From Laetmonice hystrix (lineage: Eukaryota): 64,000 bases of DNA. The stretch spans positions 11,408,001 through 11,472,000 of the forward strand of contig OZ249436.1 of NCBI GenBank assembly GCA_965235115.1. Direction: 5' to 3'. This document shows positions 1 to 64,000 of the stretch, in pieces (position 1 is the first letter of the stretch; every line of letters begins with the position of its first letter). The notes under the pieces were generated by a model, which was not told the DNA's origin, did not search any database, and was given only the letters and a program-made list of their open reading frames with translations. Made by a program: the position numbers and the translations under genes.

Positions 1-95
1 AGAGACTGGGTCAGGTAGACGCTGCCAGTCCGGTTGTCAATACGGAAGAAATGTTCGGCAGGGTACACTCCGGTCAAGGCGTACACGGTCGAACC
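1..95 (-). CDS. cadherin exon E118 (B, truncated by window edge)
   Basis: GSTVYALTGVYPAEHFFRIDNRTGSVYLTQS. Confidence 0.85.
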
Positions 96-3000
96 CTGAG
101 AGAGGAAATCATATGGAGAAACATCAGGACAGATGTGATGAGAAAACTATAACTATCTCTACAACTACCACCTTTTTCTATGGCTACAAGATGTACCAAA
201 AGTTACCATTACGGGATGGGGGTTGGTGAGGAGGGGTTAACTCACCGCTCGGTCTCGGTCGTTGGCCTTGATGTTAACGACTGGAGTGCCCTCTACTGGA
301 TGGTTGATGCTGATGGTGTCGTCAAACTTGCCCTCAAACTCAGGGAGGTACTGGTCGCGCTGCACTTTGACTTGAACTACCACGGAGGCAGTCCGCTCAG
401 GCACCTTACCATCTCTGGCTGATACTTGGATCTGTAAACATCGGGACAGTACATATCATTGGTGGCAATGGTTGGGGTGCATAGAACCAAACTCAGGAGG
501 AAAAGGAAAATGTTATATATGAACAATGGTGCATTGTTATACTGGGCCTATACTCACATTATAAAGTGTCTGGGTGCCCTCCGTAAGTAGTCGCTTCAAT
601 GTGATCGTGCCGGTATCTGCGTTGATGTAGAAGAACTGCCTTGCAATGTTATCTCCCGTAATGGAATACTTTAGACTGTCCTGAAAACAGAAAATATCAT
701 TTAACCAAATGTAACTATATAAAAAGGGGACAAGAAAACTTGACTTGTATATGAACCGTACAGGTGACAGTGACTTACCCCATCCAGATCGGTGGCGTTC
801 ACCTGTGTAACAAAGGCGCCCAGTTCGACCGTTTCAGGTCCTTCCACAGCGTAGTTAGACTGTGTGAACGTGGGGCCGTTCTCATTGCGGGTTACCGCTA
901 TGGTTACTACTGCAGTCGTCCTCTGTCCAGGGCTCGCACTGTCATAGGCCACGATACGTAACTAAAACATACATCCCACATGGTGATCAATATACAGCCG
1001 GCACGATCATCTAGAAAACTTTATATTACATACGTAAAAATAACATGTATATCAGAATGTTTATGTCTTTTCCCCTCGCGAATTTCAAATTGTATACCTT
1101 CAATGGCTCAACGAGCTCTCTGACCCATACAACCTTGCTATATTCATGACGACTGTCGGTATAATTGACGTCAATACTTACCGTGTACTTGGTCTCATCG
1201 TCTGCCTTGAGGTTACTCTTCACCACCAGGTGGCCGTTATCCTCATTGATACCAAAGAACGTGGGAGCTGGCATGTCTCCGATTACAGCGTACTTCATGG
1301 ACCCTCTCAGATCTCGGTCCAAGGCTTGTACCTTGGTGTAGAACTCCCGACCTACAGGAGCGTTCTCCGAGACGGTGGCGTCTTTGTAAGGTGTGTCACT
1401 GAACGACGGCTTCGACTCGTCTCGGGTAATTGTCACGATGACGGTGGCGTTAGCGATTCGCTCTGGGTCACGGTTGTCGGTGGCTTGGATACGTAACTGC
1501 CAATCGGAATTTATAGTTTGAATCAATCGCATCAACTGTTGTTGAAGTTCAATAACTTTCATGATTTGTAAAACAAATATTGGTATTCCCCTAACAATTT
1601 CGCTCATATCGCTTCCAAAGCTATCCAAATACAAGGTTGAAGAATCAAACAAGAAAGACAGCGTTGTTTGTGATTTACTATCCTGTATTATCATTAGCCC
1701 GACTCTCCCTGAGACAATGTTGTGTTTTACTTACCGACTCCCCCTGAGACAGTCTTGTGTTTTACTTACTGACTCTCCCTGAGACAGTGTTGTGTTTTAC
1801 TTACTGACTCTCCCTGAGACAGTGTTGTGTTTAACTTACTGACTCTCCCTGAGACAGTCTTGTGTTTAACTTACTGACTCTTCCTGAGACAGTCTTGTGT
1901 TTTACTTACCGACTCTCCCTGAGACAGTGTTGTGTTTTACTTACCGACTCTCCCTGAGACAGTGTTGTGTTTTACTTACCGACTCTCCCTGAGACAGTGT
2001 TGTGTTTTACTTACCGACTCTCCCTGAGACAGTGTTGTGTTTTACTTACCGACTCTCCCTGAGACAGTGTTGTGTTTTACTTACCGACTCTCCCTGAGAC
2101 AGTGTTGTGTTTTACTTACCGACTCTCCCTGAGACAGTGTTGTGTTTTACTTACCGACTCTCCCTGAGACAGTGTTGTGTTTTACTTACTGACTCTCCCT
2201 GAGACAGTGTTGTGTTTTACTTACTGACTCTCCCTGAGACAGTGTTGTGTTTTACTTACCAACTCTCCCTGAGACAGTGTTGTGTTTTACTTACCAACTC
2301 TCCCTGAGACAGTGTTGTGTTTTACTTACCAACTCTCCCTGAGACAGTGTTGTGTTTTACTTACCGACTCTCCCTGAGACAGTGTTGCGTTTTACTTACC
2401 GTATATTGTTTCTCGGAAGTTTCCGTCAGTGGTTTGGTAACCGTGATAAGGCCAGTGAGAGGGTTCATATAGAAGAACGGTTTCACGATCTCAGGACCAA
2501 TCAACATGTAGCGAACCTCATCCTGCAACAAACCACGAATTATTTAATAATCTTCAAATATACATCTACTCGGAACATGCGACGAAACCGTACATGCCCT
2601 CCCCAATTCTTTGGTTTCTTGCATAATTCATTATAATAATGACGTGCGCGAGTGACACAAACAAGATAATCTACTATACCTAACTTAATCCTTTTCAAAT
2701 AAAATCACCACTTTATGTACAGAACGTTTACGGCTACAATATTTGATCTTGCTGTGTATTATTTAAAGAGCCATCCATTATCCCGCAATCCCCCCCCCCC
2801 CTACACACACACACCCACACTCCAGAAGTCCTGCCTCCCACTCACCCCGTCCCTATCGGTAGCCTCCACCCTGGCCACACTTTCCCCGATCGGGTAGTTC
2901 TCCACGATAGTGGCCGGGTAGTTGGAGCGGGCGAACACGGGCCCGTTCACGTTTCTTCTCACTGTGATTATGACGTCTGTGGTGGCTCGTTGGTTGGGGT

Positions 3001-6000
3001 TTGAACTGTCGTATACCTGGACCCTCAGCTGGTCACATAGAAACAGAGGTACATGAGGATAAGACACAGGATATGACGGTCTAATATAATGTATACTATC
3101 GCCTTGTAGTTTAAAATGATCATATGAAACAATACTGACACAGGTTAAGTCATCCAAAGATAAAGGACAGGTATTGCCTGAGTTCACTCACCACGTATCT
3201 AGTTGATATGTCATTCTTCAGAGGACTCCGGACATACACGTTACCGTTCTTATCTACCCAGAAGTAACTTGGCGCTGACAGGTTACCAACGACCTCATAC
3301 ATCAACACCCCCTACAGGAGACAACAGGTACTACGACTTTAGACAATTCTCTTCATCCGTGCCGCCATAATTTCTCCCGGTTTTCTTTTTACGAACGACT
3401 GAAGTAATTTGCTACCTGAATACTAACAAAAACTGAACTTTGGCCAATTATATGAAGGTGGTCATCACCTTGCACCTGATTCTACAGGAAAGTAAATAAT
3501 TGTGTATCCAAACTTTACCTTAAGATCCTGATCCTGGGCAATGATCCTGACAATGGAAGATCCATTGACAGCCTCGTTTTCAGTGATGGTCTTCTCGTAC
3601 TTTGGGAAGGCGACTGTGGGCGGGTACTGGTCACGTGACAGAGTTAGCTGTACCTGGGTCGTCGACATCTTCTCTGGGTTCGACTGGTCACGTGCCCGTA
3701 TAGTGAACTGTGGGGGGAAATATAACGATAAAATATTAATATTCACAAAGTCTCAACGGGTGTAATGATAGTGGGGGCAATAAAATTCCACCACAGATTC
3801 CGCTCATAAAGGTCTCTGCTGACCAACAGAGACCTGTATGAGCGAAGTTGAGAATGAGAATATACACATGTAATACTGACCGCATATCTGTTTTTCTCGG
3901 CCTCCGCCAGGGGTCTCTTAGCGGTGACGTCTCCCGTGTCGGGGTTGATCCAGAAATAGGTGATGGCTGCTTGCCCCTCCTCGTCATCCACGATCTCATA
4001 CTGTATCACGTCCTTCTGTAACGGCAACGGAACAATAATCTCAGCCACATGGTCATCTCATGTTGGTTTCTACAACATGACAGAAAACAAGCAAACACTC
4101 TCTTTGGTTTCTGTTAAAATCTACTCACGGCGTCCCTGTCGGTGGCCTTCACGGTCAAGATCCCCACACCGATCGGGAAGTTCTCAGACACTTCTTTCTG
4201 GTAGATGTTCTTCTCAAACTGTGGTGTGAATTCGTTTCTCCTCACTGGTAGTACGAGCTCCGTGAAGATCCGCTGCTTGGGGTTGGCACTGTCGTACGCG
4301 GCCACTCTCAACTGTAAAACAAAACAACTTCTGTCACTTCAGAAATATTTACAAGTAACATGCTGCCTGAAATTACAACTTATAAATTCTCATGCTCTCT
4401 TAAAACGTCTCTCAAATTGGTTGGAGTAAAGTTCCCCTTTCTACTTTACAATTATTCCAAATTCAGTGCCTATTTAGACAAACACCTCCCGGGGCCACTG
4501 ACCGTGTATGAACTGAGTCGGAGAGGATCATCCTTGAGATTACCGATCGTACGGACCACCCCGGTGGTACGGCCCACACCGAAATACTGACGGGCTGGGT
4601 ACAGACCTACAGCCTCGTATATCAGCTCACCCTGTAACAAAACCAACACGTCACATACGTCATCAAGGTTATGAAACGGTCAGCCTCATTGGCTATGATA
4701 AAACATAAACAATCTTAGGTTTTGTGAAACCTTAAATTAATCATCCCGCAAATAATAAGTGGAATATCATGAATATGCCTTATTATTTTATGAATGAAGA
4801 TGAGATAAACATTATTGTGGTATTGGACAAACCTTGAGGTCTGAATCCTCAGCTTTGACAGTGTACACTCCGCTAAGGTTGGCAGAGTTTTCAGACACAG
4901 TTCCCGGAATGTAAGGCAGGTTCTTCCAGACAGGTGGTTCCTCATCTCGAGCAATGGTCAGCGCGATGCTGGCATTGGCTGACTTACCCCGTCCGTCGGT
5001 CGCCTGCACTAGGAGCTGGTGAGAGACAGTCAAAAACACAATTAGTAAAACTTAGACTCTAAAACAGCTTACATTTCGACGGAGTATAAGAAATATAAAT
5101 CCTGTAAAACACGAGAAATGGTCTCCTGCTGCCCTCTGGCGGTAAACTTGGGAGCCGCTTGGTAAGTGACGTAAATTTTATATTGGCCTCCAGCTATTGA
5201 GTTCACCCTCACAACCCCCTCCTTCCCCACGGCTACTTACTCTGTATCCAGCTATTGAATTCACCCTCACAACTCCCTCCTTCCCCACGGCTACTTACTC
5301 TGTATCCAGCTATTGAATTCCCCCTCACAACCCCCTGGTTCCCCACGGCTACTTACTCTGTATCCAGCTATTGAATTAACCCTCACAACCCCCTCCTTCC
5401 CCACGGCTACTTACTCTGTATGCGTTCTTGGCCGTAGAGAGTGGTTTCTTCAGCCGAACAATTCCAGTGCTTTCCTCCAACAGGAAGAAATCTGCGCCAT
5501 CATCGCTGGCCGACACCATTGAGTAGGTCACTTTGTCCTGCGATAAAACATTCACAATACGCTTACCTATGGGCATTAAATGATGAGAAACCCTTCAGGC
5601 AGGAACAGTGCTTACAGAACACAATCTTTACATGAGAGCAATGAAGAGCAATGGATCTCTACCAATGAGACTGCCCCTGACGAGCCACTTTACTTTGAGA
5701 CTGCCACCAGCTCCCCCTCCCACCCCGCCAGATACAGCTGCTGCCACCTACCGTCGAGTCGGCATCTCGTGCCGAGACCTGTATGATCGTCTCGCCGACA
5801 CCAAAGCTCTCGGCGATGGCCTTCTGGAGGGTGGCGGTGGGTCTGAACACAGGCCCGTTCACGTTACGCTGAACGTTCACCAAGAGTCGCGCAGTGGCCC
5901 TCTGGTCTGGGAACTCGCTGTCATACGACACCAGGTTCAGCTGAAAGAGAGTGCAGTAACAATGTACGAAAACTTCACAAACGTGGACTACCAGTACAAT

Positions 6001-9000
6001 ATAGGTCTACCAGTACAATATAGGTCTACCAGTACGATATAGGTCTACCAGTGCAATATAGGTCTACCAGTACAATATACCAGTACGATATAGGCCTACC
6101 AGTACGATATAGGTCTACCAGTGCAATATAGGTCTACCAGTACAATATAGGTCTACCAGTGCAATATAGGTCTACCAGTACAATATACCAGTACGATATA
6201 GGCCTACCAGTACAATATAGGTCTACCAGTACGATATAGGTCTACCAGTGCAATATAGGTCTACCAGTACAATATACCAGTACGATATAGGCCTACCAGT
6301 ACGATATAGGTCTACCAGTGCAATATAGGTCTACCAGTACAATATAGGTCTACCAGTACGATATAGGCCTACCAGTGCAATATAGGCCTACCAGTACAAT
6401 ATAGGCCTACCCGTACAATATACCAGTACGATATAGGCCTACCAGTACGATATAGGTCTACCAGTGCAATATAGGCCTACCAGTAAAATATAGGCCTACC
6501 AGTACGATATAGGTCTACCAGTAGGCCCCTACGAGCAGACGGCGTGAGGATAGGGGGCAGCACTGAGCAGCCAGCCTGAGGACAGGGGGCAGCCGCAACC
6601 TGTCTGAGGACAGGGGGCAGCAGCAGCAGTGGGCGTGAGGACAGGGTGCAGCACTGAGCAGCCGGCCTGAGGACAGGGGGCAGCACTGAGCAGCCGGCCT
6701 GAGGACAGGGGGCAGCAGCAGCGGGCCTGAGGACAGGGGGCAGCACTGAGCAGCCGGCCTGAGGACAGGGGGCAGCAGCGGTCGGCCTGAGGACAGGGGG
6801 CAGCAGCAGGGCCCGGCCTGAGGAAGGGGGCAGCAGCAGCCGGCCTGAGGACAGGGGGCAGCAGCAGCAGCCGGCCTGAGGACAGGGGGCAGCAGCAGCG
6901 GTCGGCCAGAGGACAGCAGCAGCAGCAGCCGGCCTGAGGACAGGGGGCAGCAGCGGTCGGCCTGAGGACAGGGGGCAGCAGCAGCTGGCCTGAGGACAGG
7001 GGGCAGCAGCAGCGGCCGGCCTGAGGACAGGGGGTAGCAGCAGCAGCAGCCGGCCTGAGGACAGGGGGCAGCAGCAGCAGCAGCCGGCCTGAGGACAGGG
7101 GGCAGCAGCGGTCGGCCTGAGGACAGGGGGCAGCAGCAGCAGCGGCCGGCCTGAGGACAGGGGGCAGCAGCAGCAGACGGCCTGAGGAGAGGGGGCAGCA
7201 GCAGCAGCGGCCGGCCTGAGGACAGGGGGCAGCAGCAGCAGACGGCCTGAGGACAGGGGGCAGCAGCAGCGGTCGGCCTGAGGACAGGGGGCAGCAGCAG
7301 GGCCCGGCCTGAGGACAGGGGGCAGCACTGAGCATTCGGCCTGAGGACATGGGGGCAGCAGCAGCGGCCGGCCTGAGGACAGGGGGCAGCAGCAGCAGAC
7401 GGCCTGAGGACAGGGGGCAGCAGCAGCCGGTTTCATTACCTGGTAGTTGGCTAGTTGAAGGCTGTCGGTGGCCAGACTACGGATCACTTTGATAATCGCT
7501 CCAGCCCCACCTTCCTTCACTTGGAGAGAGAAGAAACTGGGCGCGGGGTAGACTCCAGCAATCTCGTACAACATCTCACCCTGTCAGGAGGAAATAATCA
7601 GACGGTCAGCGCCACCTAGCGGCAATCACACGTTTCCTACCTCACAATCCTTCAGTAAGTTCAGTATCCTTCAGTAACTCGGTGCAGGTATACGTGTTAC
7701 TAGATTACTCCCACACTAACACAATATTGGCAATTCTGTAGACGCGAATAAACTTTCAAACAAAACTTTCTATTTGAAACTTCAGGCAAAACAGGATTCA
7801 ATCAAATATGACAACTTCTCAATTGTGTATAACAAAACGATAGTCGGGCTTTGCTATAATCACTGCACTTGAATTAGATTTCTACACTTCTTAATATTTC
7901 TTTTGTATGCATGGCCCATGTATAAAACTTTAAATTATAAAGTAGCTGCGGTGACAATGATGCGGCACGCTATTTTTGTGATAATCAGTAACCTGAGGCC
8001 TATCGCCTGAAGATAAAACGACATCAAACAGAGGTGTCCAAGAACTCAGCGCCTAGGGCCAGTCCTCGTTCTCCCCTCATATGGTTTTAGTTTCTTCATA
8101 CAGACTCCCCGTACGTAATACAATATTCTGGTATAACCTTTGATATATTATATGTGTATTATAAACCCCTGATCATTTCTATTCCATAAAACAACTGGCC
8201 CTAACCATCTATATTTACATTTTTAACGAATAACTACCACAGAAAAAGTATCTATACTCCAAAAGAGTTGTTTTCTTTGTATTCGTCGTACAATGTATAT
8301 TGTTTTTATGCTGCGTCTATTGTAAAACATTAGCAGCAGACGTGAGTCACACAAATACAGGCGATCTGGTTCACCTGACTCCACTACAAGTCATCCACAC
8401 TCTGCTGACTCCTTTCACTTTTTCAGACCTCTGGGTCATTTTCTAACAATACGGCCGTTTCCATAGCAACTGACTCAGAGATAGCCTGACCATTTATCAG
8501 CCGAACAGTTCCCGGTCGAGTTACGTAAATAATGTAAGTCTCTTTTGTACTTTCAATTTACATCTTCATAGCTAAATGACCATCGTAAACGCCTCTGAAA
8601 ATATGGGGTTCCTTTTCTTATTTTCAAATACAAGGTATATAATCTAATGACAATATCTTTCGCTGATAAGTTTTCAGTATTCTATTTAGGAACGTAAGAT
8701 TAATTGTGCATTGTTCATAAAAACCGAGTCATGCAACCATAATTTAATAATGAGAATAAATGACAAATCATGTCATGTTTATTAAACAAAGTGACCCTTA
8801 ATTTGGTTCCTCTTCGTATTTTAAATTAGAGTAAGTGTGACCCTCACACAATCTACACACTGACCTAGTAATTAGAAACTGATTATATAAACAACAGGTG
8901 GGAAAGGCCGTGTACCCTTTGACACACGTCACGTGAGGCCATCTTGGAGACAGGGTATGCATGGCGCAGATAACTTCACCCCATCAAACCCCCTCCCCGG

Positions 9001-12000
9001 GACACTGGTCATTATTTTAATCAATGCCCAATAATTGATTGAATTTACAAACATATTCAGCATACATGAAGTTAACCATAAATAAACGCATTTTCTACAG
9101 CAGAAGAGTTAATTAATAGAATTAATTATGAATTCAAGTCTAAGTACACAGGTGGCCAGAATATGACTCTGACTAATCAGTTTTACTTCATGAAATTAAT
9201 GGAAATTAATTAGCAAATCTTACTGTACATCTAAACCTCCACTTAGCCCATTAAATCATGCAAACGAACAAAAACTGACGGTAGAAGCTATCAAATATTA
9301 CCTGTCTGTTGGCATCGCTGGCCTTGATTTCGGCAATGGTACTGCCCACAGCCTGTGACTCGGGTATGTCGACGTTATACAGTCCTCGGTCGAACCTTGG
9401 CGGCTGGTTATCACGGGGTACAGACACGACAACCTTGACGGTCGTCGTCTTGTCGCTGGGCAGGGCCTGGTCGGAGGCCTGGACTGTCAACTGTAACGGC
9501 AGGGTTAGACACATGAGGAGGGTGGTTACCGACGGCAGACACACGTTCAGCGCCATACTCAGGCCACTACACCGGTAATAATGTCACTGGTCACGTCAGG
9601 TCGGGAAACAAGTTGGAAATCCACTGGTGGATATATGTGTAGTGTATTGAAGTGTATTCAGCGGACAAATGATGTCATGTTGCGATGTGGAATACGTGAA
9701 TTAGATTCCTCAAGTTACAGAGATACTCAGATACTGAGTGAGGGCAACTCCTCAGATGTGCTGGGTCGGGTAACCTCACTCAGTGCCGTTCTCAGCACAA
9801 CACAATGCCTCAGAGCCAGGGAGTTATCCTGTACTCCCGCCAATTTTACACTCCTTCTGCTTGGTCGATGGGTTCCATTACAAAGTGTGCGGAAACATGT
9901 TGAAAGCTTTGATTGTTAATACTCCAGTGGTTGTGAGAACTTCTGGCGCCACTCACAGCAATCCCCAACATCTATCCCAGGTAAGTTAAGGCAAGAGGCG
10001 TGGCCACTAGTGAGGTGCCGTCATCAAGGAATATCTTCAAGTCCATGAACTTGTATATCCCATCCACAGAGAGCAACCCTCATCAGACAACGCACACCAG
10101 TCCACGGCCCTCGCTGTGTGTGTGTACGTGTGTATTCACGCACGTGTGTGTGCTACTGGTGAGGATGGCGACCAGAGGAGGTGGCTGAGAACCGTCATGG
10201 TCCCGTGCGAAACTTACTCATGCGTGACTGACAACGCTCATTACGACTCGCCATCACTTGCACGTTCACCTGAGACAGGTGACCACCTGGTGGTCCTTTT
10301 TATACTCAATAAACCCCGAGGACTTGTTTGGTGTGACTTGGCAACTTTTAATTATGCCTGATAATATCAGTCAAAATATGGAAATGTACCGGCTCATGGT
10401 ATACAAGTACGTATGGGCCATCTGAAGAGGGAATGTACCGGCTCATGGTATACAAGTACGTATGGGCCATCTGAAGAGGGAATGTACCGGCTCATGGTAT
10501 ACAAGTACATTATGGGCCATCTGAACAGGGAATGTACCGGCTCATGGTATACAAGTACATTATGGGCCATCTGAACAGGGAATGTACTGGCTCATGGTAT
10601 ACAAGTACATTATGGGCCATCTGAACAGGGAATGTACCGGCTCATGGTATACAAGTACGTATGGACCATCTGAACAGGGAATGTACCGGCTCATGGTATA
10701 CAAGTACGTATGGACCATCTGAACAGGGAATGTACCGGCTCATGGTATACAAGTACGTATGGGCCATCTGAACAGGGAATGTACCGGCTCATGGTATACA
10801 AGTACATTATGGGCCATCTGAACAGGGAATGTACCGGCTCATGGTATACAAGTACGTATGGGCCATCTGAACAGGGAATGTACCGGCTCATGGTATACAA
10901 GTACATTATGGGCCATCTGAACAGGGAATGTACCGGCTCATGGTATACAAGTAAGCCATCTGAACAGGAATGGAATGAGTGGGATGGTACCATTGCGAGA
11001 CCATTTAATGACTGCCCGTTTACCGCTGGCACCTAGCAAAATGATTGGCTTTTACATCATTCATATGAAAACTTTATATTCATAGTCCTATATTACTGAA
11101 TAATTATAGGTGCACACATCCTGAAAGGAGGTTAGGCTCAGATGGTCTTGAAGATGTTTATCCACTTTTCATTGAAGACATGGAAAAAGAGTTGTTTTTT
11201 TTCTATTTATCAATTTTAATAAAAACTTAAATAAGGTAGTATAGAAACAAAACCCCCCTCCACCCTTCACCCAGGAACAAAGAACAAATGAGGTCACCAA
11301 CGCCTTGCAATCACTGGAGGAGAATGTCTGCGTCTTGCGATAATTTGGCCTGAGGCCGGTTTGGTTGACCTTTAGTCTGCTAGTATATGACCACTTGTAT
11401 GAGAATAACCTGATGTTATGATAGCCTCGGGCCGTCTTTTACTTGGTCCTTTAATTATAGATGCCGTCTTAGAACAAAAGCAGGGTTTAAAGTCTGCCGA
11501 GAAATCGCTGGCCTTGCCACTTCTTCCCCCCAAGCTGAGTGAAGCAACCATTCACAGTATCGTTGAAAGCCTTTGAACTCTCTGTAAATTTTACCTCGGA
11601 GGCTTTTTGCTGTTGTTTTAGAAGTTTATGTTTGAAAATTACTTATACGTAAACTGAGTACAGAATCTCAGTGTCCCGATATAAGAAGGACAAAACTGCA
11701 TATCAATTTATTAATATAAAGCATGCATAAACCTGAGCGCACCTCTGCATCGATGACAGTGAAGTGCGACATATTTAAACCCATAAAAAGATAATGTTTT
11801 AATGAATATACAAACACGAACACAGACCATAATTATAAAGACATACCGTATAGGTGGCTGCTTGTCCCTCGGACAGTGGCTTTTTGAGCGAGATCTCTCC
11901 CGTCGTTGGGTTGATATAGAAGAATTCCCTGGCAGCGCTGTCACCGACGAGCGAGTAACGTATAATATCCTGTAACACAAACTCCACATTGACAATCACT

Positions 12001-51000: not shown

Positions 51001-54000
51001 ACGAGTAATCTAACTTACCTGGGTGTCCCTGTCATTGGCCTGGAGTTTGCCGATGGAGGTAGCGATGTTAAGTGTCTCCATGATGGTAACCGGTAGACTG
51101 GATGCCCGCCATGTTGGACAGGCCAGGTTACGGTTAACATTAACCGTTACTGTGGTTGTACTGTCCTTGGACGGTACACCATTGTCATACGCCCGCACTC
51201 GCAGCTACAAATCAAACACAAAACTTACCAACTCATACCACAGGTTCAATAACCATCATTTTTCAAGGAAATAAAAAAACTTCCTCTCGTATTGTAAAAC
51301 AGTCGCCTTGGCAAAACATCCTTTCTTCACTTTAGACTCACCACATAAACGGTCTCCGTATCTTTGGCGATCTCTCCTGAGACAGTGACAAGTCCATCAG
51401 TGGGGTTGATCTTGAAGTAGGACGGGGCTGAGTCATCCCCTATCACTTCATACCGAATGATTTCAAACGTCTCCTACAACACAGTACAGCCTTGTCATAT
51501 TCTTCTCATCATTCAAAACTCGGCCATGAACTGTTCCAGGATAGAATCCTATACAATAAAGTTGACAATATCCCGCAATGCAAGCACATAATGATGCTGT
51601 GAGCCAACCCTCACCTTAGGGTCGTTGTCTCTGGCGACCACCTGAGCGACCCGACTGCCCAAACTCTTGTCCTTACGGATTGTCGCCTCGTATGGCGCGC
51701 CGACAAAGGTTGGAGCGTTCTTGTTACGGATAACCTTGACGTTGATGGTGGCACGGCGAGAGCTGGGTTTGGACGGGAAGCCGCCGTCATAGGCACGTAC
51801 TTCAATCTGTACTCAATGTAACAAATTGATTTCAATCAATATATGCGTTCACACATACAACCCTACGTTATTCAAGACAGATCAAGACTTGCCCGGGTAC
51901 GAGTGCCCGACTATACTCTGTACGTACCCTGTAACGTTCGGAAGAGGCGGGGTCTTGCAGCAGTGAAGTTTTTAACTTGATTTCCCCACTGTCACGGTCA
52001 ATGAGGAAGAACCGCTGGGCCTTAGCGTCACCAACGATCTCATAGAATACCTTCTTGTACGGATCCTGATCGGGGAAAAAGTTTACAACATGTCATCAAC
52101 TCGTCACACTGAGGATAGTATTACAGAACATGACCATTACACCTGAACACCTCAACGACTAACGAGAGTGTGTGTGAATCAGACCGACCCTTCTGTCCTT
52201 GTCCAGGGCCTTGACGGTGTAGATGGCCCTCTGGAAGCTCTCCGTCTCTTTGATTGTCACCTCGTCCGAGTCGGTGGGTTTGGTGAAGACGGGTACCTCG
52301 AGGTTACGGTCGACAGTGACCGTTAGTATCTCAATGGCTGTCCGTGGGGGCGAGTCACCGTCAGCAGCCTCGATCCGTATCTGGAATCATAAACCGCCGT
52401 CAGTAGGGATCGAGCACAGATCGAACTGTTACCCTCATTAAACGGGTTAACACGGTCAGCTCTGCCATAGAGAACGTATGGCGATAGAGGGCGTTAGTAG
52501 GACTGCCACATGGCTGCTGGTTGGGCTATTGACGGCCGCTGTAAATGGTTTTAGCAAACATGTGTTGCAAAATAGAGAGTAAAATTATTCCTTTGGAGCT
52601 TACATTCTTTAAGTTACTGTATGTCTCAATACTACAAGCGATGTTACGTTGATTTTTCCCGTTTTTTGTCTATACTATACCGCAGTAAGACTGCGGGCGC
52701 CACCTATCGGAAAACAACTGGCGCCTAGTTCCGTCATACTTGAGAAAGATAATGACCAGGGAAGGCGTTGTTGATCGCTCACCTTATAAATCTCATTGTC
52801 ATCCTCATTGAGACTTCTCTTCACCTTGACGGTACCACGCGCATCGATAGAGAAATAAGTGGGGGCGTTGTCGTCACCAATGATGGTGTAAGTGACCTTG
52901 TTGTAGGGAACCTGAGGGAAACACATCATGACTGCCATCAGGATCTCTGATTATAACACTACTGCTGCCATACATCTCTTCTACAATATCTGCTCTACAA
53001 TAATAAAGATACTCGTTAATAGACACTCCATTTATCTTGATTATTTGTGGACATAAAAATAAAATAGTTTGATTCAAGTTTAACTCGCAAAAACTACATG
53101 TCCTGAGTAAATCTCCTGTCTCACTATTGCCAGTATCACAGCTTGACGTCAATTAAATCGTATTTCAGACTGACGAATGATTGAAGCTGAAAGAGACACT
53201 TTCTGAAAGAAAAGATTTCAATTTCAAACCACCTCCATGTTGCCTTGGGACTGCACTGGTGATGTAGAAGGGACAGATGCCCAAGTCACAGACGGTCTCA
53301 GGCGGCGGGAACTCCCAATGTTTAAAATGAGTCCATCTGGTTGCCAAACCACGTACTCAGTAACGGAGGAAGATATTTGTAACCCCTAAACCATTGGCTT
53401 ACCAACTACAACTTCTCAGATTCAAAGACGTCTGAATGAAGTGAAGCAAAGCTAAAGCAACCGTCTGTATTAAGTAATGCACAAATAATAGAAGCATCTC
53501 CTACTCGTGGCCTGAGGAAGAACGGCGACCTGAAGTGTAATACTGAAGCATGTAGGCCTAGGCTAAAGATGAACTAAAGCGGTGAGAACTATTGGCCAGC
53601 GTTTTTGGTATTTTACCAATGTAACCTCCCGTAACTAGGGATTACGTTTCTATATCATGAAAAGTCAATAAAAATGAAGGAGATAGCGCAACTTACTAAA
53701 ACAACATGACGCGATATAAGAAGCGTTGTAAACATCACTGTAGAAATGCGTGGGTGGGTGGTTGGGTTGGTGTGACAGGCATTTTGTTTCTTGAATGTGT
53801 TTGTGTTTGTATTTGTGTGTGTGTTTGAGACTGATCACCAGTATTTCCAAGGCTATAAAACGGGGCAGTAGTAGGGGAACACTTGAATATTACCTGGACG
53901 GTCTGGGAAGAGGAGTTTCCAATGTTGACATTGGCCTGGAGAGGGTCAAAGATAATTATGGCACACGTCATCTCATTCAAAAACTCTCATACATTTACTC

Positions 54001-57000
54001 CTCTTGTAAAACAGCAGGACTTGTAACAAAGTGACGGGGAAATCAGAGGTTGCGTTAGGAACACAGCAATCCACCTTTAAAACGGTAACGTTGAAGGTGG
54101 TCAGAGAGTCCAAAACAGCTATAGGTGGCAGCAAGGCTATGTGCTGAAACGTGATGCCATCATTCCTTGAATAAGACTGGACTACTTTCTCTTGAGATTG
54201 GTAACTCTGACAGTACCCACGATATGATCCATTCAACAACAACAAACAAGAGCATCTCCCCAATATCTATCCCCACCCAACTGGTCTCATCACAAGGCGG
54301 TCACGTTAGCCACTAGGTGGCACCAGCGTCTCTCCCCCTGGCGGCAGTCCTGGCTGTAACTCCATGCCCATGTACCTCCGACACACAGAACTACTTGAAC
54401 ACTCACGTTAATGTCGGCATCCCTGGCGAGGACCTGCTTGACGACAGTACCAACGTCTACGTTCCGCTTGATTGAAGCCACGTACGGAGTCGCCTCAAAC
54501 TTGGGACTGTTGAGGTTACGAGCGACGTTTACCGTCACGCGAGCATTCTGGTTACTGGACAGACTTGGCATACCCTTGTCTCTGGCTTGGATGGTCAACT
54601 GGAAAACACCAACACAACCTCGTGAAGTTTGATAATCCTTTCATATACCTTTCCTCGAAAAAATCAAATCAATTTTGTGCCTCTATGGATTAAAATCAGA
54701 GTAATATTTTAACTAGAATACTGACACTGTATCTAGCGTTGGTGTCGCTCGCCAAATCCTTCCTGACAGATACTTCGCCTGTGTCCTCGTTAACGATGAA
54801 AAACCTCTGGGCGAGAGTGTCCGATATGAGGTAATACTGCACCACATTGTGAGGTTCCTATCCGAACACAAACAACATCATTAATTCACCAGCAGATTGA
54901 TCTGGGCTATGTAGTCATGAAAGTAGGCCTACTTATCCTTATAAAGGTGCATTTACGGGAGGTTTCCCCAAAATAATGTCGTCCTAAAGCAGAAACTGGA
55001 ACTAATTCATTATACGAAGGTGGTCCCTCTTGGACATCACCCAAAAGAACACTGGATTTTTTAGGCGACATTTGTATACATGAGTTGCCATTTTCCCCAA
55101 AAGATGAAGCGTGTCGGCTCACCTGTTGGTCGGTGTCGGTGGCAGCCACCTTGGTAATGGGAGTGCCCAGTTCCTGTGTGTACAGTATGTTAACGGTAAG
55201 ACTTGTCTGACTGAAGCGGGGAGCGTTCAGGTTACGGTTGACGGTAATCTTAACGATGGCGACGTCTGATTGGAAGGGAGTGCCGTTATCGAAGGCTTCC
55301 ACACGGATCTGATACTCCGTCTCTGTGTCCTCGCGTAGTGAAGACTTTAACTTGATGTCTCCCGTACGGTCATCGATTTGGAAGAACGTTGGCGCTGAGT
55401 CGTCGCCAATTATCCTGTAGCGTACCACTCCAAAACGCTCCTATAAAATAACACAATTAGTTTACGCTGTAGTTTTTCAGGAACTCAAAGAATAAAAAGT
55501 TCTGTTGATTTTCATTTAAACTACAATATTAATTCATCGTACATTTCTTAAAACAATAATTCAAAGGATATCAAGGAAATCACATCCTTCAGTAAGAACC
55601 TTTCAAATAGTGAATAACAAGTCGATCTAAGTTATTTTTCCATTCATCAGCGTTCAAAGCCCCAGACCCATGCCAGGGATGCTAAGGTTACCTGTGGGTC
55701 CCTGTCGTTGGCCTTGACTTGGACGATGCGGCGGCCAGTCTCCTGGTTCTGGGTGATGGATGCGGCATACACTTCCTTCTCAAACTTGGGCGGGTTGTCA
55801 TTACGAACCACTTCAATGTTTACTGTCGCGTTGTCACTCGTCCGCTGGGGCGTGCCCAGGTCCTTGGCTATGATCCGGAACTGTTAATAACATGAGACAT
55901 AAACCAATTATATAACTCAAAAGGAAACAAGAAAAAGAAAGATTTATTGATTGACTGTATGATGGGGTCACTAAACCTGCTATGTGTCTTACCCTATAAA
56001 GCTTGACCCGGTCCTCGTCATTCAGCAATGATTTCTTCACAGCGATGTCCCCCGTGTCCTCGTCCACCTCAAAGAACTCCAAAGCTTTGGTGTCTCCAGT
56101 GGCCTCGTAGAAGAATTGGTTGTTTGGTGCCTACAAAACGGCAGATTCAGATTATAAATATCGTCCAGGTCAGAGATAAAAATAGGAAAGGAAAGACATC
56201 TTGAAAACTGCGGCACATTCAGGCTGCCCAGAGTCAGTACTCTCTTTTGGCGCCAGTTTGTCTTCCAGTTTGTCTTCCAGTCAAATTCCAGATAATCCCC
56301 CTACTGGCGTCATTTTCTGCCAACCTTTTCTTTTGAAACCAAACTTCCCCCCTTTTAGATTCGCCCCTGTGAGTGATATGCAATCATTCAGAAAACTGAA
56401 GATATAGATAGGGAGACGTACCGCCCTGTCTCTGTCGCGTGCGGCCACCTTGTGGAAGTATACACCCTGTGGCTGGGTCTCCGGGATTTTCACAGTGTAA
56501 TCGGTTTGTACCCAGGTCGGGGAGAAGAAGTTTCTCAAGACTGTGACGTAAACAATGGCGGTGGCACTCCGGGGTGGGTTACCGCTGTCCTGGGCAACCA
56601 CTCGAATCTGGATCCAACAAAAGGGTTTGTCAGTAAAGACAAAAGACTTAACATTAGAGCTTGTTTCCCGTAGTCAACTTCTACAAAGCAAAGGTGTAAT
56701 TGTCCTCACTGCAATTCACATTCAAAGGAACGGGCAATAATATACAATGATTGCTTTTTCATGAAATGATATTGTTGATATCTGTGAAACACTCCCTGAG
56801 TTTAAACCTTCCCGCCAGAAGAGATTTTACCCTATAGAGTTCTGTAGTTTCTCTCTCCAGTGAAGACTTTGTCGTCAGGGTACCAGTCTCAGCGTTGATC
56901 GCAAAGAAGCTCGGAGCAGTGTCATCTCCAATGATTCCGTACGTGACGGTCTTAAAGTCCTCCTGAAAACGTCACAGCAACAAGAAAAATGATTCTTCAA

Positions 57001-60000
57001 TTCAACAACAAGCTTAAGCTAATTATTCTAATCTTAATGTTATAAGTTATGAGGACTCACGGCCGTATCAGCGTCCTTGGCTTGCACGGAGACGACCCTA
57101 TGTCCTGACGGGACGTCCTGCCGGATGGTGGCCGTGTAGGATGTGTTGAAGAAGATCGGGTCGTTCGTGTTACGGACTACCGTCACACGTACGGTGGCAC
57201 GGTTAACGGCCCGCTTCGATGTCGGTTGACCTCTGTCCTTGGCGCTAATCTCCAGCTACGAGAGTCAAGGTCATTCAGTTAACGGTCATTTCTCCATGGC
57301 AAATGTTTTTTGTCTATAAACCGGCTATATCTTTGCTATCGATTCAAAATACTGATTACAAATAAATTCAAGTTAAAAATGTTCATGTATCCTATCCTTC
57401 CCTCCCCTTACTTTATTGTAGACTAATTGTTTAAAAGTCAAACACTGACTGTGTAACGTGTTCTACGCTCAGGATCCAAGACGACAGATTTCTTCAGACT
57501 TATGTGTCCTGTGTCCTCATTGACCATGAAGTATTCCAAGGCCGTGCTGTCCCCAGTCAGTGTGTACGTGACGTCTTTATGAGGAGCCTACAACCACCAA
57601 ACACAATCTTACACACCCTCCGGTATCTGTGTTACACGAAAACAGATTTAACCTAACTTAAAGGGAAATAGAGCTGAGTCCAGTTTCTTTTTCAAAACTC
57701 AAGTTCTTGCTTTTGCGTACGCTAAAGCTTCTTGAAGCTAAAGTTACTGATTAGATGGCTGAAGCAAGAACTAAAAAACTTAAGTTTTGGGTGCTAGTTT
57801 CTTTCTGTACCGACCTGGACGTCTCCGTCGGCGGCAGTGACCCGGATGAAGGACGAAGACAGAGGCTCGTTGTCCTGGATGGTGGTACGGTACGTCTCGG
57901 TCTCAAACCTGGGTGCGTTCAAGTTACGGTTGACAGTAACCGTCACCAGACCCTCAGCGCTTCGTTCACCACCGTCTGTCGCCCTCACACGTACCTGGTG
58001 GTCACACGCACAGTAATCAGGTTATATGTGTGGTAATCAGAGAATAAAATTCTCTTGAGTTTTACTGCAGGACCTTCGGAAGGAGAGTCTGGTTTTGGCT
58101 AATAGTTTGGTACTTGATACTTGGTGTCGATAATTTTATACTCACGACATAACCGAGGTCTTGGTCCTCACGAAGACTCCGGGCGATGGAGATCTTGCCA
58201 TTCGTTTTGTCAATCTTGAAGTAGCGTGGTGCCTTTCCATCCCCAACAATTTCAAACTCAATCTTGTTGAAAGGCGCCTGAAAAATTGAGTAAACAAAAA
58301 ATATATCATGCCTATGTCACCAGTTATTCAGTTATTGTAAGCTTATTTCACTTGCTTCCAGTTTTCTGTTACTAAAATTCTGTCGGATATAACTCAGTAA
58401 GTGACATTCGTTGGTGTTCCTGTCCCTGTAAGCGGATATAACTCAGTGACTTACGTTGGTGTCCCTGTCCCTGGCGGTGACCTGAAGAACCTCCTCATTG
58501 ACAGCCCGTGTGAAGTCGATATTCTTGGCGTACTGAGGAGGTGTGAACTCGGGAGCGAAGTTATTACGAATCACATTGACGGTCACCTGAGCTGTGGAAC
58601 TCAATGATGGCTCTCCCAGATCACTGGCCATCACCGTAAGCTGGAACAGGGTGGCGGAGACGTTGTACATCTAAGGTTCCATCCATCTATATGTTATGGT
58701 TCCATTAGAACAATACACGTTTCGTAATACGTAATTTCTGGTCAAGTTATGTTTCTCCCGCAGTACTTACCACATAGCGGGAAGTTTCCTTGTCCGTTGT
58801 GACGGGCCTGCTGACGGTAATCGCGCCACTCTCAGGGGAGATGTAGAAGAAGTTCTGTCCTGAGTTGGGGTTCACTGTACGGATGGAGTAGCGTATCTCA
58901 CTGTTAGGTCCCTCGGGATCCTTGTCCTCTGCCTTCACCTGAACGACCTGAGTGCCAGGAGACACAGTCTCCAACAGGTTCGGGGCTGTGTAAGATGCTT
59001 TCTCGAAGGCAGGAGTGAAATCGTTTTGATCCTGGAAACAAACAAGACAAGACATAAGAAAGAGGCTCGTGCTATACAGAGTGTTTCCCATCTATTATGG
59101 TGACCTTACTTTATACGTAAGTCAGTTTTAATGAAAGCGGACAATTCTAGTATTAAAAATGATAAAAAGGTTTATGAAACCAGAACAAGATGGTTGCAAG
59201 GGGACCTCACCAGTACGGAGATAGAGACAGTAGCTGAGTACTCGGGACTGTTCTGTCCGCTGGCCTCACGGGTTGATACGACCAGAGTATATTGTTTCTG
59301 TCTCTCGTAGTCCAGTCCCTGGCTAGTGGTCAGTTTACCGGACCCCTCCTCCAACCGGAAGCGACCCGTATCTCCCCGTACGATGGCGTAAGTGATAGAC
59401 TTCTTCTCGTCCTGGTCCACAGCCTGGTCACAAATCACGCAGTACAATCAAATAACCTTCTCAACTAACAATTTCAAAGAATGTTTACTAATTGTTATAT
59501 CATATAGAATGGTAACAAATATCAAGAAAATAGGACTAATGGTCAGGATTAGCTTGGTTTGTTGTGGTCCCATCAAATTTCGTGGACATGTTCTGAGGGT
59601 GTATCTCCTAACTGAGCTAGAAGTTCAAATTGTTTCCAGCAGCTCGCTGGTTGTTGGCGCCGTTTACTCACCTCCACCGTGGTGACCAGGTACCCTGGCT
59701 TGTTCTCCGGTACCTGGGCCACATAGAGTTTGGTTGGGAAGACTGGTAGGACATCCTCGACGTCAATAACCTTGATGGTGACGGCAACGACAGTGGCCCG
59801 CTGATCGAAACCAGTATCAGTGGCTGTCACTAACAATATGTGTTCCTTCTGGTCCTCGTAATCTAACGGTTGGCTTGTCCTGATCTGTCCGTTCGTCTCA
59901 CCGATCGTGAAGAAACTAGAGACAAGACCAAGGTCATTATAGGCCATGTTCATGCGTACATTCAGGGAATACAGAAAATGTAGCTTCCTTGATGCTCATC

Positions 60001-63833: not shown

Positions 63834-64000
63834 CTGAAATAACAAATGTCATGTATGGAAGTCTCTCACGGAAACCAGAGGTATACTCTCAATGACAGAC
63901 TCGAGTTGGCACCACAACCATTAACAAAACTCACCTTACTGATTTTACTGGCATTTGTACGTGGGAATCAATTCTAAAATACGTTTATTTGACCCACAGA

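What the first reader, a model, noticed from the sequence alone, without database searches (positions are those of the whole stretch)
1..58640. Abrupt switch from canonical Ca2+ linkers to about 59 R-N-x-N-x-P / R-D-x-x-P-P linkers
Seen: E3-E11 carry DQNDNAP, DINDNSP, DVEDVLP, DQNDFTP and LDYE/LDRE. From E12 onward the linkers read x-R-N-x-N/F-x-P or x-R-D-x-x-P-P (a few diverge further) and LDRE is reduced to L-x-x-D, while DxD and the A-x-D-x-G-x-P Asp are kept. Known: canonical linkers bind three Ca2+; site 3 uses the DxNDN Asn residues, DxD and the FG-loop Asp, while sites 1-2 need the acidic DxNDN and DRE residues. Inference: an array of linkers binding about one Ca2+ each, with a near-invariant Arg possibly replacing a cation by salt bridge. 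This would give a filament with distinct, possibly elastic or low-Ca-tolerant, mechanics.
Basis: partly seen in the sequence, partly recalled or inferred. Interest (0 to 1): 0.78.

Follow-up and report, generated by a model that had tools for sequence, protein, structure and literature searches.

The report
Giant worm cadherin with arginine linkers
A marine worm's roughly 88-domain cell-surface cadherin joins about 75 of its domains with a shortened, arginine-containing linker that has lost two of the three usual calcium sites; molluscs, a brachiopod and a ribbon worm share this junction, which is undescribed in the literature searched.

Summary
The window lies inside one minus-strand cadherin gene. 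After a head with acidic linkers (DQNDNAP, DINDNSP, DVEDVLP, DQNDFTP), exactly 59 linker exons from 58640 to 240 carry an Arg, and 15 more follow downstream. Arg is invariant (74 of 74) against 33% identity between repeats and uses all six codons.

Site-3 ligands are kept as well as in ordinary cadherins. The site-1/2-specific acids (D67, D100, D103 equivalents) are lost. The E11 and E69 equivalents are mostly kept.

By strand register, Arg probably sits at D100, not Q101.

The gene is single-copy. It is the annelid member of an unnamed family found only in Lophotrochozoa, auto-labelled "protocadherin Fat 4-like". The family has no EGF or LamG domains and a shared conserved tail, and in a bivalve the head-to-stalk switch sits at the orthologous position.

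PCDH15 EC5-6 is a solved precedent for a site-3-only linker. AlphaFold models an R-type domain pair confidently, but its inter-domain geometry matches no solved pair (rmsd 6-8.5 Å, against 1.7-3.7 Å for a canonical control).

One Ca2+ plus an Arg salt bridge is the best reading. It is not proven.

The parts
1..64000 (-). Interior of one giant single-pass cadherin gene. The gene runs from about window +71,000 (N-terminal exon) to at least -31,300 (tail exon with the AINPIY motif). Estimated size is about 88 EC domains and about 9,700 residues.
   Evidence: Six-frame motif scan; flanks fetched and scanned; HMM exon map; homology of both ends to full-length mollusc and nemertean proteins. Pfam Cadherin PF00028.
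58768..63848 (-). Last exons of the N-terminal 'head', with acidic linkers: DQNDNAP (61474-61695), DINDNSP (60070-60282), DVEDVLP (59597-59836), DQNDFTP (58768-59046). They are interspersed with atypical linkers (ELDKNLGP at 60955-61137).
   Evidence: Canonical 9-residue spacing in 5/5. Orthologous to residues about 460-1028 of the bivalve protein P0079.
58446..58640 (-). First R-type linker exon (VIRNNFAP). This is the switch point.
   Evidence: The bivalve P0079 switches at the orthologous place, with VLDQNDNNP followed by VFRN-TAP.
240..58640 (-). Array of 59 R-type linker exons ('A' exons: F-G strands, linker, A-C strands to DxD). They alternate with 'B' exons carrying the rest of each EC. 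Introns are almost all phase 0.
   Evidence: The divergent B exon at 7437-7583 was recovered.
48536..49234 (-). Intron-less stretch with two R-type linkers (VVRNKQTP, MLRNLRAP) and one complete EC. A related species keeps it at 84% identity with identical linkers.
45289..45462 (-). R-linker exon (VVRDRGTL) whose following EC lacks DxD. All three sites are predicted empty.
   Evidence: Similar linkers occur in molluscs (VLRDSGVL, ILRDANTL).
29184..29357 (-). Second R-linker exon (VQRDEGDL) without DxD.
240..23025 (-). Zone where R-N-x-N-x-P and R-D-x-x-x-P linkers largely alternate (a two-EC super-repeat). It continues past the window edge.
   Evidence: The same alternation occurs in molluscs. 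RD units lack the acid at the E69-equivalent position.

Best explanation
The window is the middle of a single-copy gene for a giant cadherin, estimated at about 88 EC domains and about 9,700 residues. Its parts are a head of roughly nine ECs with ordinary acidic linkers, a stalk of about 75 ECs, a few membrane-proximal ECs, one transmembrane helix and a short conserved tail.

The stalk ECs are joined by a distinct 'R-type' linker, which differs from the canonical one in these ways:
- It is one residue shorter.
- An invariant Arg sits where D100 normally sits (inferred from strand register).
- D67, D100 and D103 are gone.
- The E11 and E69 equivalents are mostly kept.
- The full site-3 set (N102, D134, D136, D195 equivalents) is kept.

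Most likely each such junction binds a single Ca2+ at site 3, the high-affinity site. The Arg guanidinium would fill and neutralise the former site-1/2 pocket by pairing with the E11 and E69-equivalent carboxylates.

The result is predicted to be a defined EC-EC geometry different from the straight canonical one. The stalk would then be a filament of different shape and different calcium dependence.

Shown: the sequence pattern, its conservation, the one-residue deletion, the family and its range, and the model's departure from solved geometries. Inferred: the Ca2+ count, the Arg contacts and the mechanics.
For: 1. Arg is 74/74, on a par with DxD, while repeats share 33% identity. All six Arg codons are used.
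2. Worm ligand table: site-3 set complete in 67/75 linkers; D67-equivalent acidic 2/75; D103-equivalent 18/75; E11-equivalent 59/75; E69-equivalent 52/75; at least one of the last two in 71/75.
3. In 40 relatives, 1,133 Arg linkers keep N102/D134/D136/D195 equivalents at 93/96/92/94%, against 92/93/94/93% in 6,071 canonical linkers. D67 falls to 5% and D103 to 11%.
4. Where Arg is lost, E69-equivalent acidity falls from 62% to 24% and E11 from 79% to 54%. The direction is the same in 21 and 20 of 23 proteins.
5. The one-residue shortening is confined to the stretch between the G strand and the Pro.
6. In an unbiased covariation scan, the residue after Arg pairs best with the D195 loop, the DxD and the N143 region of the next EC. 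That places it at site 3.
7. Crystal precedent: PCDH15 EC5-6 lacks DRE and the DXNDN acids, keeps DXD/XDX and binds one Ca2+ at site 3. Site 3 is also the highest-affinity site (5 versus 44 and 71 uM in CDH23 EC1-2) (PMC7547225).
8. The AlphaFold2 model of an R-type pair has pLDDT 96 and pTM 0.83 but fits solved pairs only at TMq 0.45-0.57 and rmsd 6.2-8.5 Å. A canonical control has pLDDT 97.5 and pTM 0.84 and fits the same chains at TMq 0.69-0.89 and rmsd 1.7-3.7 Å.
Against: - No structure or binding data exist for any R-type linker, and model coordinates could not be inspected. The Arg-carboxylate contacts are therefore inferred.
- Sequence alignment alone cannot fix whether Arg replaces D100 or Q101. 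The aligners disagree.
- Loss of Arg goes with loss of all ligand positions, not only E11/E69. The covariation supports one co-conserved module, not a specific contact.
- The RN/RD covariation may reflect two ancient repeat types rather than independent events.
- The AlphaFold comparison is one R-type pair (from an oyster relative, not the worm) against one control, without ions.
- No RNA data exist for the worm.
Confidence: 0.55

Rival explanations
1. R-type linkers bind no calcium. The invariant Arg neutralises the conserved DxD/D195 acid cluster itself, making a wholly Ca2+-independent, protein-only junction.
For: Arg is as invariant as DxD. Loss of Arg goes with loss of D134, D136 and D195 as strongly as with loss of E11/E69. 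AlphaFold reaches pTM 0.83 without ions. Ca2+-free linkers are an established class (papers listed).
Against: The Asn/Asp at the N102 position and all three site-3 aspartates are kept at the same frequency as in Ca2+-binding linkers. One Arg cannot balance three to five carboxylates. PCDH15 EC5-6, with comparable motif loss, still holds Ca2+ at site 3. Genuinely degenerate linkers in this same gene, at 45462 and 29357, lose DxD. This shows DxD is dispensable when calcium is not bound.
Confidence: 0.2
2. R-type linkers bind two Ca2+ (sites 2 and 3), as PCDH15 EC2-3 and EC3-4 do, using the retained E11, E69-equivalent and D136. The Arg would play an unrelated structural role.
For: The E11 and E69 equivalents are acidic in 79% and 62% of Arg linkers. 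Two-ion linkers exist (PMC7547225).
Against: D100 and D103 are both lost. The linker is one residue shorter, in the stretch that holds Q101, whose backbone oxygen binds site 2. A cationic Arg sits in that stretch.
Confidence: 0.12
3. The junctions bind one Ca2+ but are floppy, like PCDH15 EC5-6. The stalk would then be an entropic, elastic tether rather than a shaped rod.
For: The only solved site-3-only linker adopts several orientations (PMC7547225).
Against: That linker has no conserved Arg and is not shortened. The R-type model has pLDDT about 97 across the linker and pTM 0.83. The invariance of Arg argues for a specific packed interface. AlphaFold confidence does not measure flexibility, so this rival is weakened, not excluded.
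Confidence: 0.25
4. The array is a decaying or mis-assembled repeat, not a working gene.
For: No RNA run was available for this worm.
Against: About 150 consecutive exons lie on one strand with almost all introns in phase 0 and no frame breaks. An orthologous fragment shares 84% identity. Orthologues of 5,000-7,900 residues exist in molluscs, including intron-free 16-22 kb contigs from a cuttlefish that look transcript-derived. Head, TM and tail are conserved.
Confidence: 0.02

Closest known systems
Protocadherin-15 EC5-6 linker (partial Ca2+-free, site-3-only)
   Same: It loses the DRE motif and the acidic DXNDN residues and keeps DXD and XDX. Crystals show one Ca2+ at site 3 (PMC7547225). 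This is the best functional analogue for the predicted ion count.
   Different: It is a single linker in an 11-EC protein. Its sequence is PPNNQ with no conserved Arg, XEX is also lost, and it is conformationally variable. The worm has about 70 consecutive junctions of one stereotyped, shortened, Arg-bearing type with the E11/E69 equivalents retained.
Ca2+-free linkers (PCDH15 EC9-10, LI-cadherin, Drosophila N-cadherin)
   Same: These are non-canonical EC-EC junctions that change the shape of the ectodomain (papers listed).
   Different: They lose site 3 as well, are isolated, and have no shared sequence signature. Only 2 of the 59 window linkers (45462, 29357) plus one just outside it (-2824) look like this.
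FAT and Dachsous giant cadherins
   Same: They are very long cadherin-only or cadherin-rich ectodomains with a single TM. Databases name the family's members 'protocadherin Fat 4-like'.
   Different: FAT has 34 ECs plus juxtamembrane EGF and LamG domains, and Dachsous has 27 ECs, mostly with three-Ca2+ linkers (PMC9935876). No EGF or LamG domain is present here. Arg linkers are at most 12% in 233 other giant cadherins, against 49-98% in this family. The tail motifs are different.
Unnamed lophotrochozoan giant cadherins (e.g. Pinctada P0192, Saccostrea P0153, Octopus P0193, Lingula P0028, Tubulanus P0016, Potamilus P0079)
   Same: They share the head, the switch point (shown for the bivalve P0079), the R-type stalk, RN/RD alternation, DxD-less hinge linkers, the TM and the tail motifs (FVEPPSFLxEYETQ, QSLxMYVPPDE..LGEINMTF, A[IV]NPxY). 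The worm gene is their annelid orthologue.
   Different: The worm has the longest stalk seen here, about 75 R-type linkers against about 14-62 in relatives. It also has the purest Arg record, 74/74 against 49-98%.

Membership tests
Cadherin superfamily | Extracellular cadherin (EC) repeats, Pfam PF00028 | tested here: met
   All six exon translations scanned match PF00028, five of them above the gathering score, with E-values down to 1e-19. The best PDB sequence matches are cadherins. The model folds as two EC domains.
Canonical three-Ca2+ EC linker | Full motif set XEX, D(R/Y)(D/E), DXNDN, DXD, XDX | tested here: not met
   In the 75 stalk linkers the D67 equivalent is acidic in 2, the D103 equivalent in 18, and the column before Arg in 7. 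The linker is one residue short. The head linkers do meet it.
Site-3-only (partial Ca2+-free) linker, as PCDH15 EC5-6 | Site-1/2 acids lost while DXD, XDX and the linker Asn are kept | tested here: met
   Site-3 set complete in 67/75 worm linkers and kept at 92-96% in relatives. Definition taken from PMC7547225.
Site-3-only (partial Ca2+-free) linker, as PCDH15 EC5-6 | One bound Ca2+ observed experimentally | not testable with these tools
   No structure of an R-type linker exists in the PDB sequence search. Model coordinates and ions were not available.
FAT cadherins | EGF and laminin-G domains between the ECs and the TM | tested here: not met
   Pfam finds only Cadherin in the membrane-proximal parts of the worm gene and of P0079, P0153 and P0016. 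Defining feature per PMC9935876.
CELSR/Flamingo | Seven-pass adhesion-GPCR moiety after the ECs | tested here: not met
   A single TM helix is followed by a tail of about 130-200 residues in the worm and its orthologues. There are no GPCR Pfam hits.
Classical cadherins | Catenin-binding cytoplasmic domain (PF01049) | tested here: not met
   No PF01049 hit in the tails scanned.
Dachsous | About 27 ECs with mostly three-Ca2+ linkers, and a Dachsous-type tail | tested here: inconclusive
   EC number and linker type do not fit. No profile for the Dachsous tail was available for a direct comparison.
Lophotrochozoan R-type giant cadherin (unnamed) | Homologous head, Arg-linker stalk, and TM with the tail motifs FVEPPSFLxEYETQ / PPDE..LGEINMTF / A[IV]NPxY | tested here: met
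   tblastn of mollusc and nemertean ends onto the worm locus; Arg fraction.

The most novel reading that the evidence does not exclude
The R-type linker is a new class of cadherin junction: shortened by one residue, stapled by an Arg in place of two Ca2+ ions, and holding one high-affinity Ca2+. It would set a fixed non-linear angle or twist between domains. A run of about 75 such junctions (about 340 nm contour) would then form a regular superhelix or zig-zag, a pre-shaped molecular spring or spacer. Its length would be tuned between species by duplicating phase-0 exon pairs, and the arrangement would have been conserved since before annelids and molluscs split.
Probability: 0.3. Interest if true: 0.85.

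Novelty: new variant of a known kind. Interest (0 to 1): 0.68.

Why it matters
Cadherin mechanics are thought to be set by how many Ca2+ ions each linker holds. Non-canonical linkers are so far known as isolated exceptions that create local hinges.

Here a whole filament, and a whole family spanning several phyla, is built from one stereotyped alternative junction. This study counted more than 1,200 natural instances of it. It gives three things:
- A clear, testable sequence rule for a one-Ca2+, Arg-compensated linker.
- A natural series of stalk lengths, from about 14 to 75 R-type linkers.
- A predicted EC-EC geometry absent from the PDB.

A structure of one EC pair, plus R-to-A and R-to-D mutants, would settle whether a side chain can stand in for two structural calcium ions. 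That would bear on interpreting disease variants at cadherin linkers and on engineering calcium-insensitive cadherin rods.

It also shows that the 'Fat 4-like' labels on these lophotrochozoan genes are misleading.

Tried and rejected
- RNA evidence. The run search found only three runs of one study, none on record as RNA. They hold exons and introns alike and are most likely DNA.
- The related-species locus for P0296 could not be fetched because the file is too large. P0008 is not on record.
- Three literature searches found no description of this family or of an Arg-type linker. Only open-access text was searched.
- Sequence alignment could not fix the register of Arg. phmmer puts it on D100. 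hmmalign and hmmsearch put it on Q101. The preference for D100 rests on the h-x-h-x-h-x strand pattern and is an inference.
- Rejected: an N-glycosylation sequon (no N-x-S/T pattern in RNxNxP) and a furin site (no RxxR).
- Rejected: that Arg conservation is due to recent duplication (33% identity, six codons).
- Rejected: paralogues in the worm. Every profile hit above 62.5 bits lies in this one locus.
- A search for a final exon ending in the mollusc-type TTML found nothing downstream of -31,281, although a GT donor follows AINPIYQ.
- Model coordinates are not returned by the tools. Arg-Glu distances and the tilt and twist of the R-type pair could not be measured.
- Only two structure jobs were allowed, so the R-type versus canonical comparison is one model against one.


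Full report
**What is in the window**

Cadherin motifs are almost all on the minus strand: 109 against 8. Translating the open segments shows a long series of EC-repeat exons. Pfam confirms the Cadherin domain PF00028, and the best PDB sequence matches are CELSR1, protocadherins and cadherin-23.

The window is G000:C1:11408001-11472000 in a 627-Mb genome that earlier notes of this scan describe as a marine worm's. Fetching 80 kb below and 30 kb above the window shows that the gene continues on both sides:
- N-terminal exons lie near window +70,000 to +71,000.
- A transmembrane exon (…APWLALVALAGVLILFCIIGMVIICFTWN…) lies at about -25,100.
- Tail exons lie at -26,130 to -26,255 and at -31,060 to -31,281.

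**Exon model**

I built a profile of a circularly permuted EC unit from intron-less units, iterated it, and mapped every exon. The permuted unit runs: F-G strands, linker, then A-E strands.

Each stalk EC is encoded by two exons. An 'A' exon runs from the F strand through the linker to DxD. A 'B' exon carries the rest. In almost every case the in-frame acceptor and donor sit exactly at the profile ends. The trailing Val and leading Gln seen in raw ORFs are the GT and CAG of the splice sites. The introns are thus almost all phase 0, an arrangement that allows exon-pair duplication without frame loss.

**Checking the observation**

From 58640 to 240 there are exactly 59 linker exons, and 15 more lie below the window. 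All 74 have Arg at one column. Other columns across the 74-75 units:
- N 58 and D 13 after the Arg.
- Pro 71/74.
- DxD 70/70 and 69/70.
- The A-x-D-x-G-x-P Asp 70/73.
- E11-equivalent Glu 55/74.
- The 'L-x-x-D' Asp/Glu 53/73.

Repeats share only 33% identity on average. Arg is spelled with all six codons: CGT 37, CGA 9, CGG 9, AGG 9, CGC 6, AGA 5. The amino acid has therefore been held while the DNA drifted.

**A correction: the linker is shorter**

I counted residues between the last conserved G-strand Val and the linker Pro.

| Linker class | Residues | Count |
|---|---|---|
| Worm Arg linkers | 8 | 70 of 71 |
| Arg linkers of relatives | 8 | 1164 of 1284 |
| Worm head linkers | 9 | 5 of 5 |
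| Canonical linkers of other giant cadherins | 9 | 5178 of 5437 |

The flanking spacings (Asp to Val, and Pro to Glu) are the same in both classes. So one residue is missing inside the linker.

The strand pattern h-x-h-x-h-x-D100 becomes h-x-h-x-h-x-R. From the other side, Pro and the two Asn line up. The most economical reading is D100 to R with Q101 deleted. phmmer gives this alignment, while hmmalign and hmmsearch slide the gap by one. This point is an inference.

On either register the acids are not hiding one position away. The column before Arg is acidic in 7/75 worm linkers and 9% of relatives' linkers. The D103-equivalent column is acidic in 18/75 and 11%.

**Ligand bookkeeping per linker**

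I assigned each ligand to the linker it serves, using established E-cadherin numbering from my own knowledge:
- Sites 1 and 2 use E11, D67, E69, D100, the Q101 backbone oxygen, D103 and D136.
- Site 3 uses N102, the N104 backbone oxygen, D134, D136, the N143 backbone oxygen and D195.

On that basis the worm's site-3 set is complete in 67 of 75 linkers, and in 53 of 59 inside the window. The D67 equivalent is acidic in 2. The E11 equivalent is acidic in 59 and the E69 equivalent in 52, with at least one of them acidic in 71. Two window linkers, at 45462 and 29357, and one just outside the window lack DxD altogether.

**The family**

I searched 1.84 billion representative proteins with a profile of the 59 window linkers. 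Of the top 150 giant cadherins, 11 were rich in Arg linkers. Their records are mollusc (Haliotis, Patella, Potamilus, Bulinus), brachiopod (Lingula) and nemertean (Tubulanus).

Two further searches added many molluscs of 4,000-7,900 residues: Pinctada, Saccostrea, Crassostrea, Mya, Octopus, Aplysia, Elysia and others. They also added a cuttlefish protein of 5,252 residues carried on intron-free 16-22 kb contigs, which look transcript-derived.

The split is bimodal. About 45 proteins have 49-98% Arg linkers. The 233 other giant cadherins have at most 12%; these include FAT, Dachsous, cadherin-23, and cnidarian, sponge and choanoflagellate giants. Any protein with about 20 or more R-type linkers should have entered the top 150, and none from outside Lophotrochozoa did. 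Shorter ones cannot be excluded.

Family members share these features:
- A TM region.
- The tail motifs FVEPPSFLxEYETQSLNMYVPPDE…LGEINMTF and A[IV]NPxY.
- In molluscs, a C-terminal TTML.

The worm has the same motifs.

The full-length bivalve proteins P0079 and P0151 start with a signal peptide. They have about seven acidic linkers, then switch to R-type, and end with one canonical VDVNDNxP before the membrane. The worm's DQNDFTP exon aligns to P0079's last acidic linker. The switch is therefore orthologous and probably predates the annelid-mollusc split.

Pfam finds only Cadherin domains, with no EGF, LamG or catenin-binding domain. The 'Fat 4-like' labels are therefore not family assignments. 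FAT is defined by juxtamembrane EGF and LamG domains (PMC9935876).

In the worm the gene is single-copy. Every profile hit above 62.5 bits lies in this locus. A fragment from a related assembly is 84% identical and has the same linkers.

**Family-wide statistics**

Acidic or ligand residues at each position, across 1,411 family linkers with both neighbours aligned:

| Position (equivalent) | Arg linkers (n = 1,133) | Canonical linkers (n = 6,071) | Non-Arg, non-canonical family linkers (n = 255) |
|---|---|---|---|
| N102 | 93% | 92% | 70% |
| D134 | 96% | 93% | 81% |
| D136 | 92% | 94% | 79% |
| D195 | 94% | 93% | 87% |
| D67 | 5% | 82% | 10% |
| D103 | 11% | 84% | 7% |
| E11 | 79% | 93% | 54% |
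| E69 | 62% | 88% | 24% |

Where Arg has been replaced, the E11 and E69 differences point the same way in 20 and 21 of 23 proteins. Site-3 residues decline too. Arg, the two shared carboxylates and site 3 thus behave as one co-conserved module. The data do not isolate a specific Arg-carboxylate contact.

RN linkers have an acid at the E69 equivalent in 72% of cases and RD linkers in 27% (odds ratio 7, 21 of 21 proteins). The number of acids around the junction is thus kept. However, RN and RD units alternate as an ancient two-EC super-repeat, so this may be inheritance rather than repeated compensation.

An unbiased mutual-information scan recovers known intra-domain strand pairs. It also shows that the residue after Arg co-varies best with the D195 loop, the DxD and the N143 region of the next EC. 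This supports its assignment to site 3.

**Precedent**

In protocadherin-15, EC5-6 lacks DRE and has PPNNQ for DXNDN, but keeps the site-3 motifs. Three crystal forms show a single Ca2+ at site 3 and variable orientations.

Site 3 is the tightest site: 5 uM against 44 and 71 uM for sites 2 and 1 in CDH23 EC1-2 (PMC7547225). Sequence-encoded ion loss is therefore experimentally established. Keeping only site 3 would make a junction that saturates at low calcium.

**Structure prediction**

No worm stretch contains two complete ECs without an intron. I therefore modelled a Pinctada pair (P0192:149-362) using 135 aligned family pairs. As a control I modelled a canonical pair from Platynereis Fat (P0236:2592-2799) using 133 canonical pairs, built the same way.

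| Measure | R-type pair | Canonical control |
|---|---|---|
| Mean pLDDT | 96.0 | 97.5 |
| pTM | 0.83 | 0.84 |
| Foldseek TMq against solved pairs | 0.45-0.57 | 0.69-0.89 |
| VIA-align rmsd over about 200 residues | 6.2-8.5 Å | 1.7-3.7 Å |
| rmsd on 5uz8 | 8.0 Å | 1.7 Å |
| rmsd on 2wcp | 7.5 Å | 2.1 Å |
| rmsd on 7sz8 | 6.5 Å | 2.3 Å |

The R-type junction is therefore predicted, with confidence, to hold its two domains in an arrangement not seen in any solved pair among Foldseek's top 1,000. I could not read the coordinates, so the kind of difference (tilt or twist) and the Arg contacts remain unknown. This is also a comparison of one model against one.

**Most likely mechanism**

Each stalk junction keeps the high-affinity Ca2+ at site 3. 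The Arg, in a linker shortened by one residue, occupies the former site-1/2 pocket and pairs with the retained E11 and E69-equivalent carboxylates. In RD units the charge is balanced by the extra linker Asp. The junction is stiffened in a non-canonical geometry.

A stalk of about 75 such junctions has a contour of roughly 340 nm at about 4.5 nm per EC (my estimate). It would not be a straight rod, and its shape should depend little on calcium above the micromolar range.

The tail has an NPxY motif and, in molluscs, a C-terminal T-x-L of the PDZ-ligand type. This suggests anchoring to a cytoplasmic scaffold (inference). The tissue and the partner are unknown.

Calcium scarcity is unlikely to be the driver. 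This is a marine worm, and the family occurs in both marine and freshwater molluscs.

**Verdict**

In the literature I could search, this is an undescribed linker class and an undescribed family that is mislabelled in the databases.

Noticed in passing
G000 contig C4, e.g. C4:25908598-25908783, C4:10009086-10009271, C4:1015034-1015219, C4:27321019-27324381: Dozens of single-exon open frames of about 900-1,000 aa (one of 1,862 aa) match the cadherin linker profile at 45-62 bits. This looks like a clustered-protocadherin-like expansion in this worm.
   Followed up: no
window 240-23025 (continues to about -17,500): RNxNxP and RDxxxP linkers largely alternate, giving a two-EC super-repeat. RD units lack the acid at the E69-equivalent position. 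The same alternation and covariation occur in molluscs (odds ratio 7).
   Followed up: partly
window 45289-45462, 29184-29357; outside the window at -2824 to -3018: Three R-linkers whose following EC lacks DxD are candidate fully Ca2+-free hinges. Similar DxD-less linkers occur in mollusc family members (VLRDSGVL, ILRDANTL, IEKDPDQL), so this linker type is probably ancient.
   Followed up: partly
window 62675-63280, 12564-13193, 28362-28781; outside at -14447 to -15894, -29880 to -31284, -32921 to -33956: Intronic minisatellites read as long open frames, for example FQAHGSLSDTFCVNH and LTASITTQHIELDT repeats. They could mislead ORF-based gene calling.
   Followed up: no
window 7437-7583: One B exon is divergent, with an insertion in the C-D region (…FFSLQVKEGGAGAIIKV…). 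The EC profile only weakly detects it (E = 0.21).
   Followed up: partly
window 21777-22067 and 21579-21710: The ORF of the linker exon at 22067 reads on through a weak second-half EC match, and a separate good B exon follows. This may be intron read-through or an alternative or duplicated half-exon.
   Followed up: no
outside the window, about -24,900 to -25,950: Downstream of the TM-coding stretch, one long ORF continues into a Pro-rich repeat (PPPQVRT/PGTYP…). The conserved juxtamembrane motif is on a separate exon at -26,130 to -26,255. The Pro-rich part is probably intron, but an alternative tail is not excluded.
   Followed up: no
outside the window, about -31,270: After AAINPIYQ a GT donor follows (CAGAG|GTAATT), so a further 3' exon is expected. 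No exon ending in the mollusc-type TTML was found within 39 kb.
   Followed up: partly
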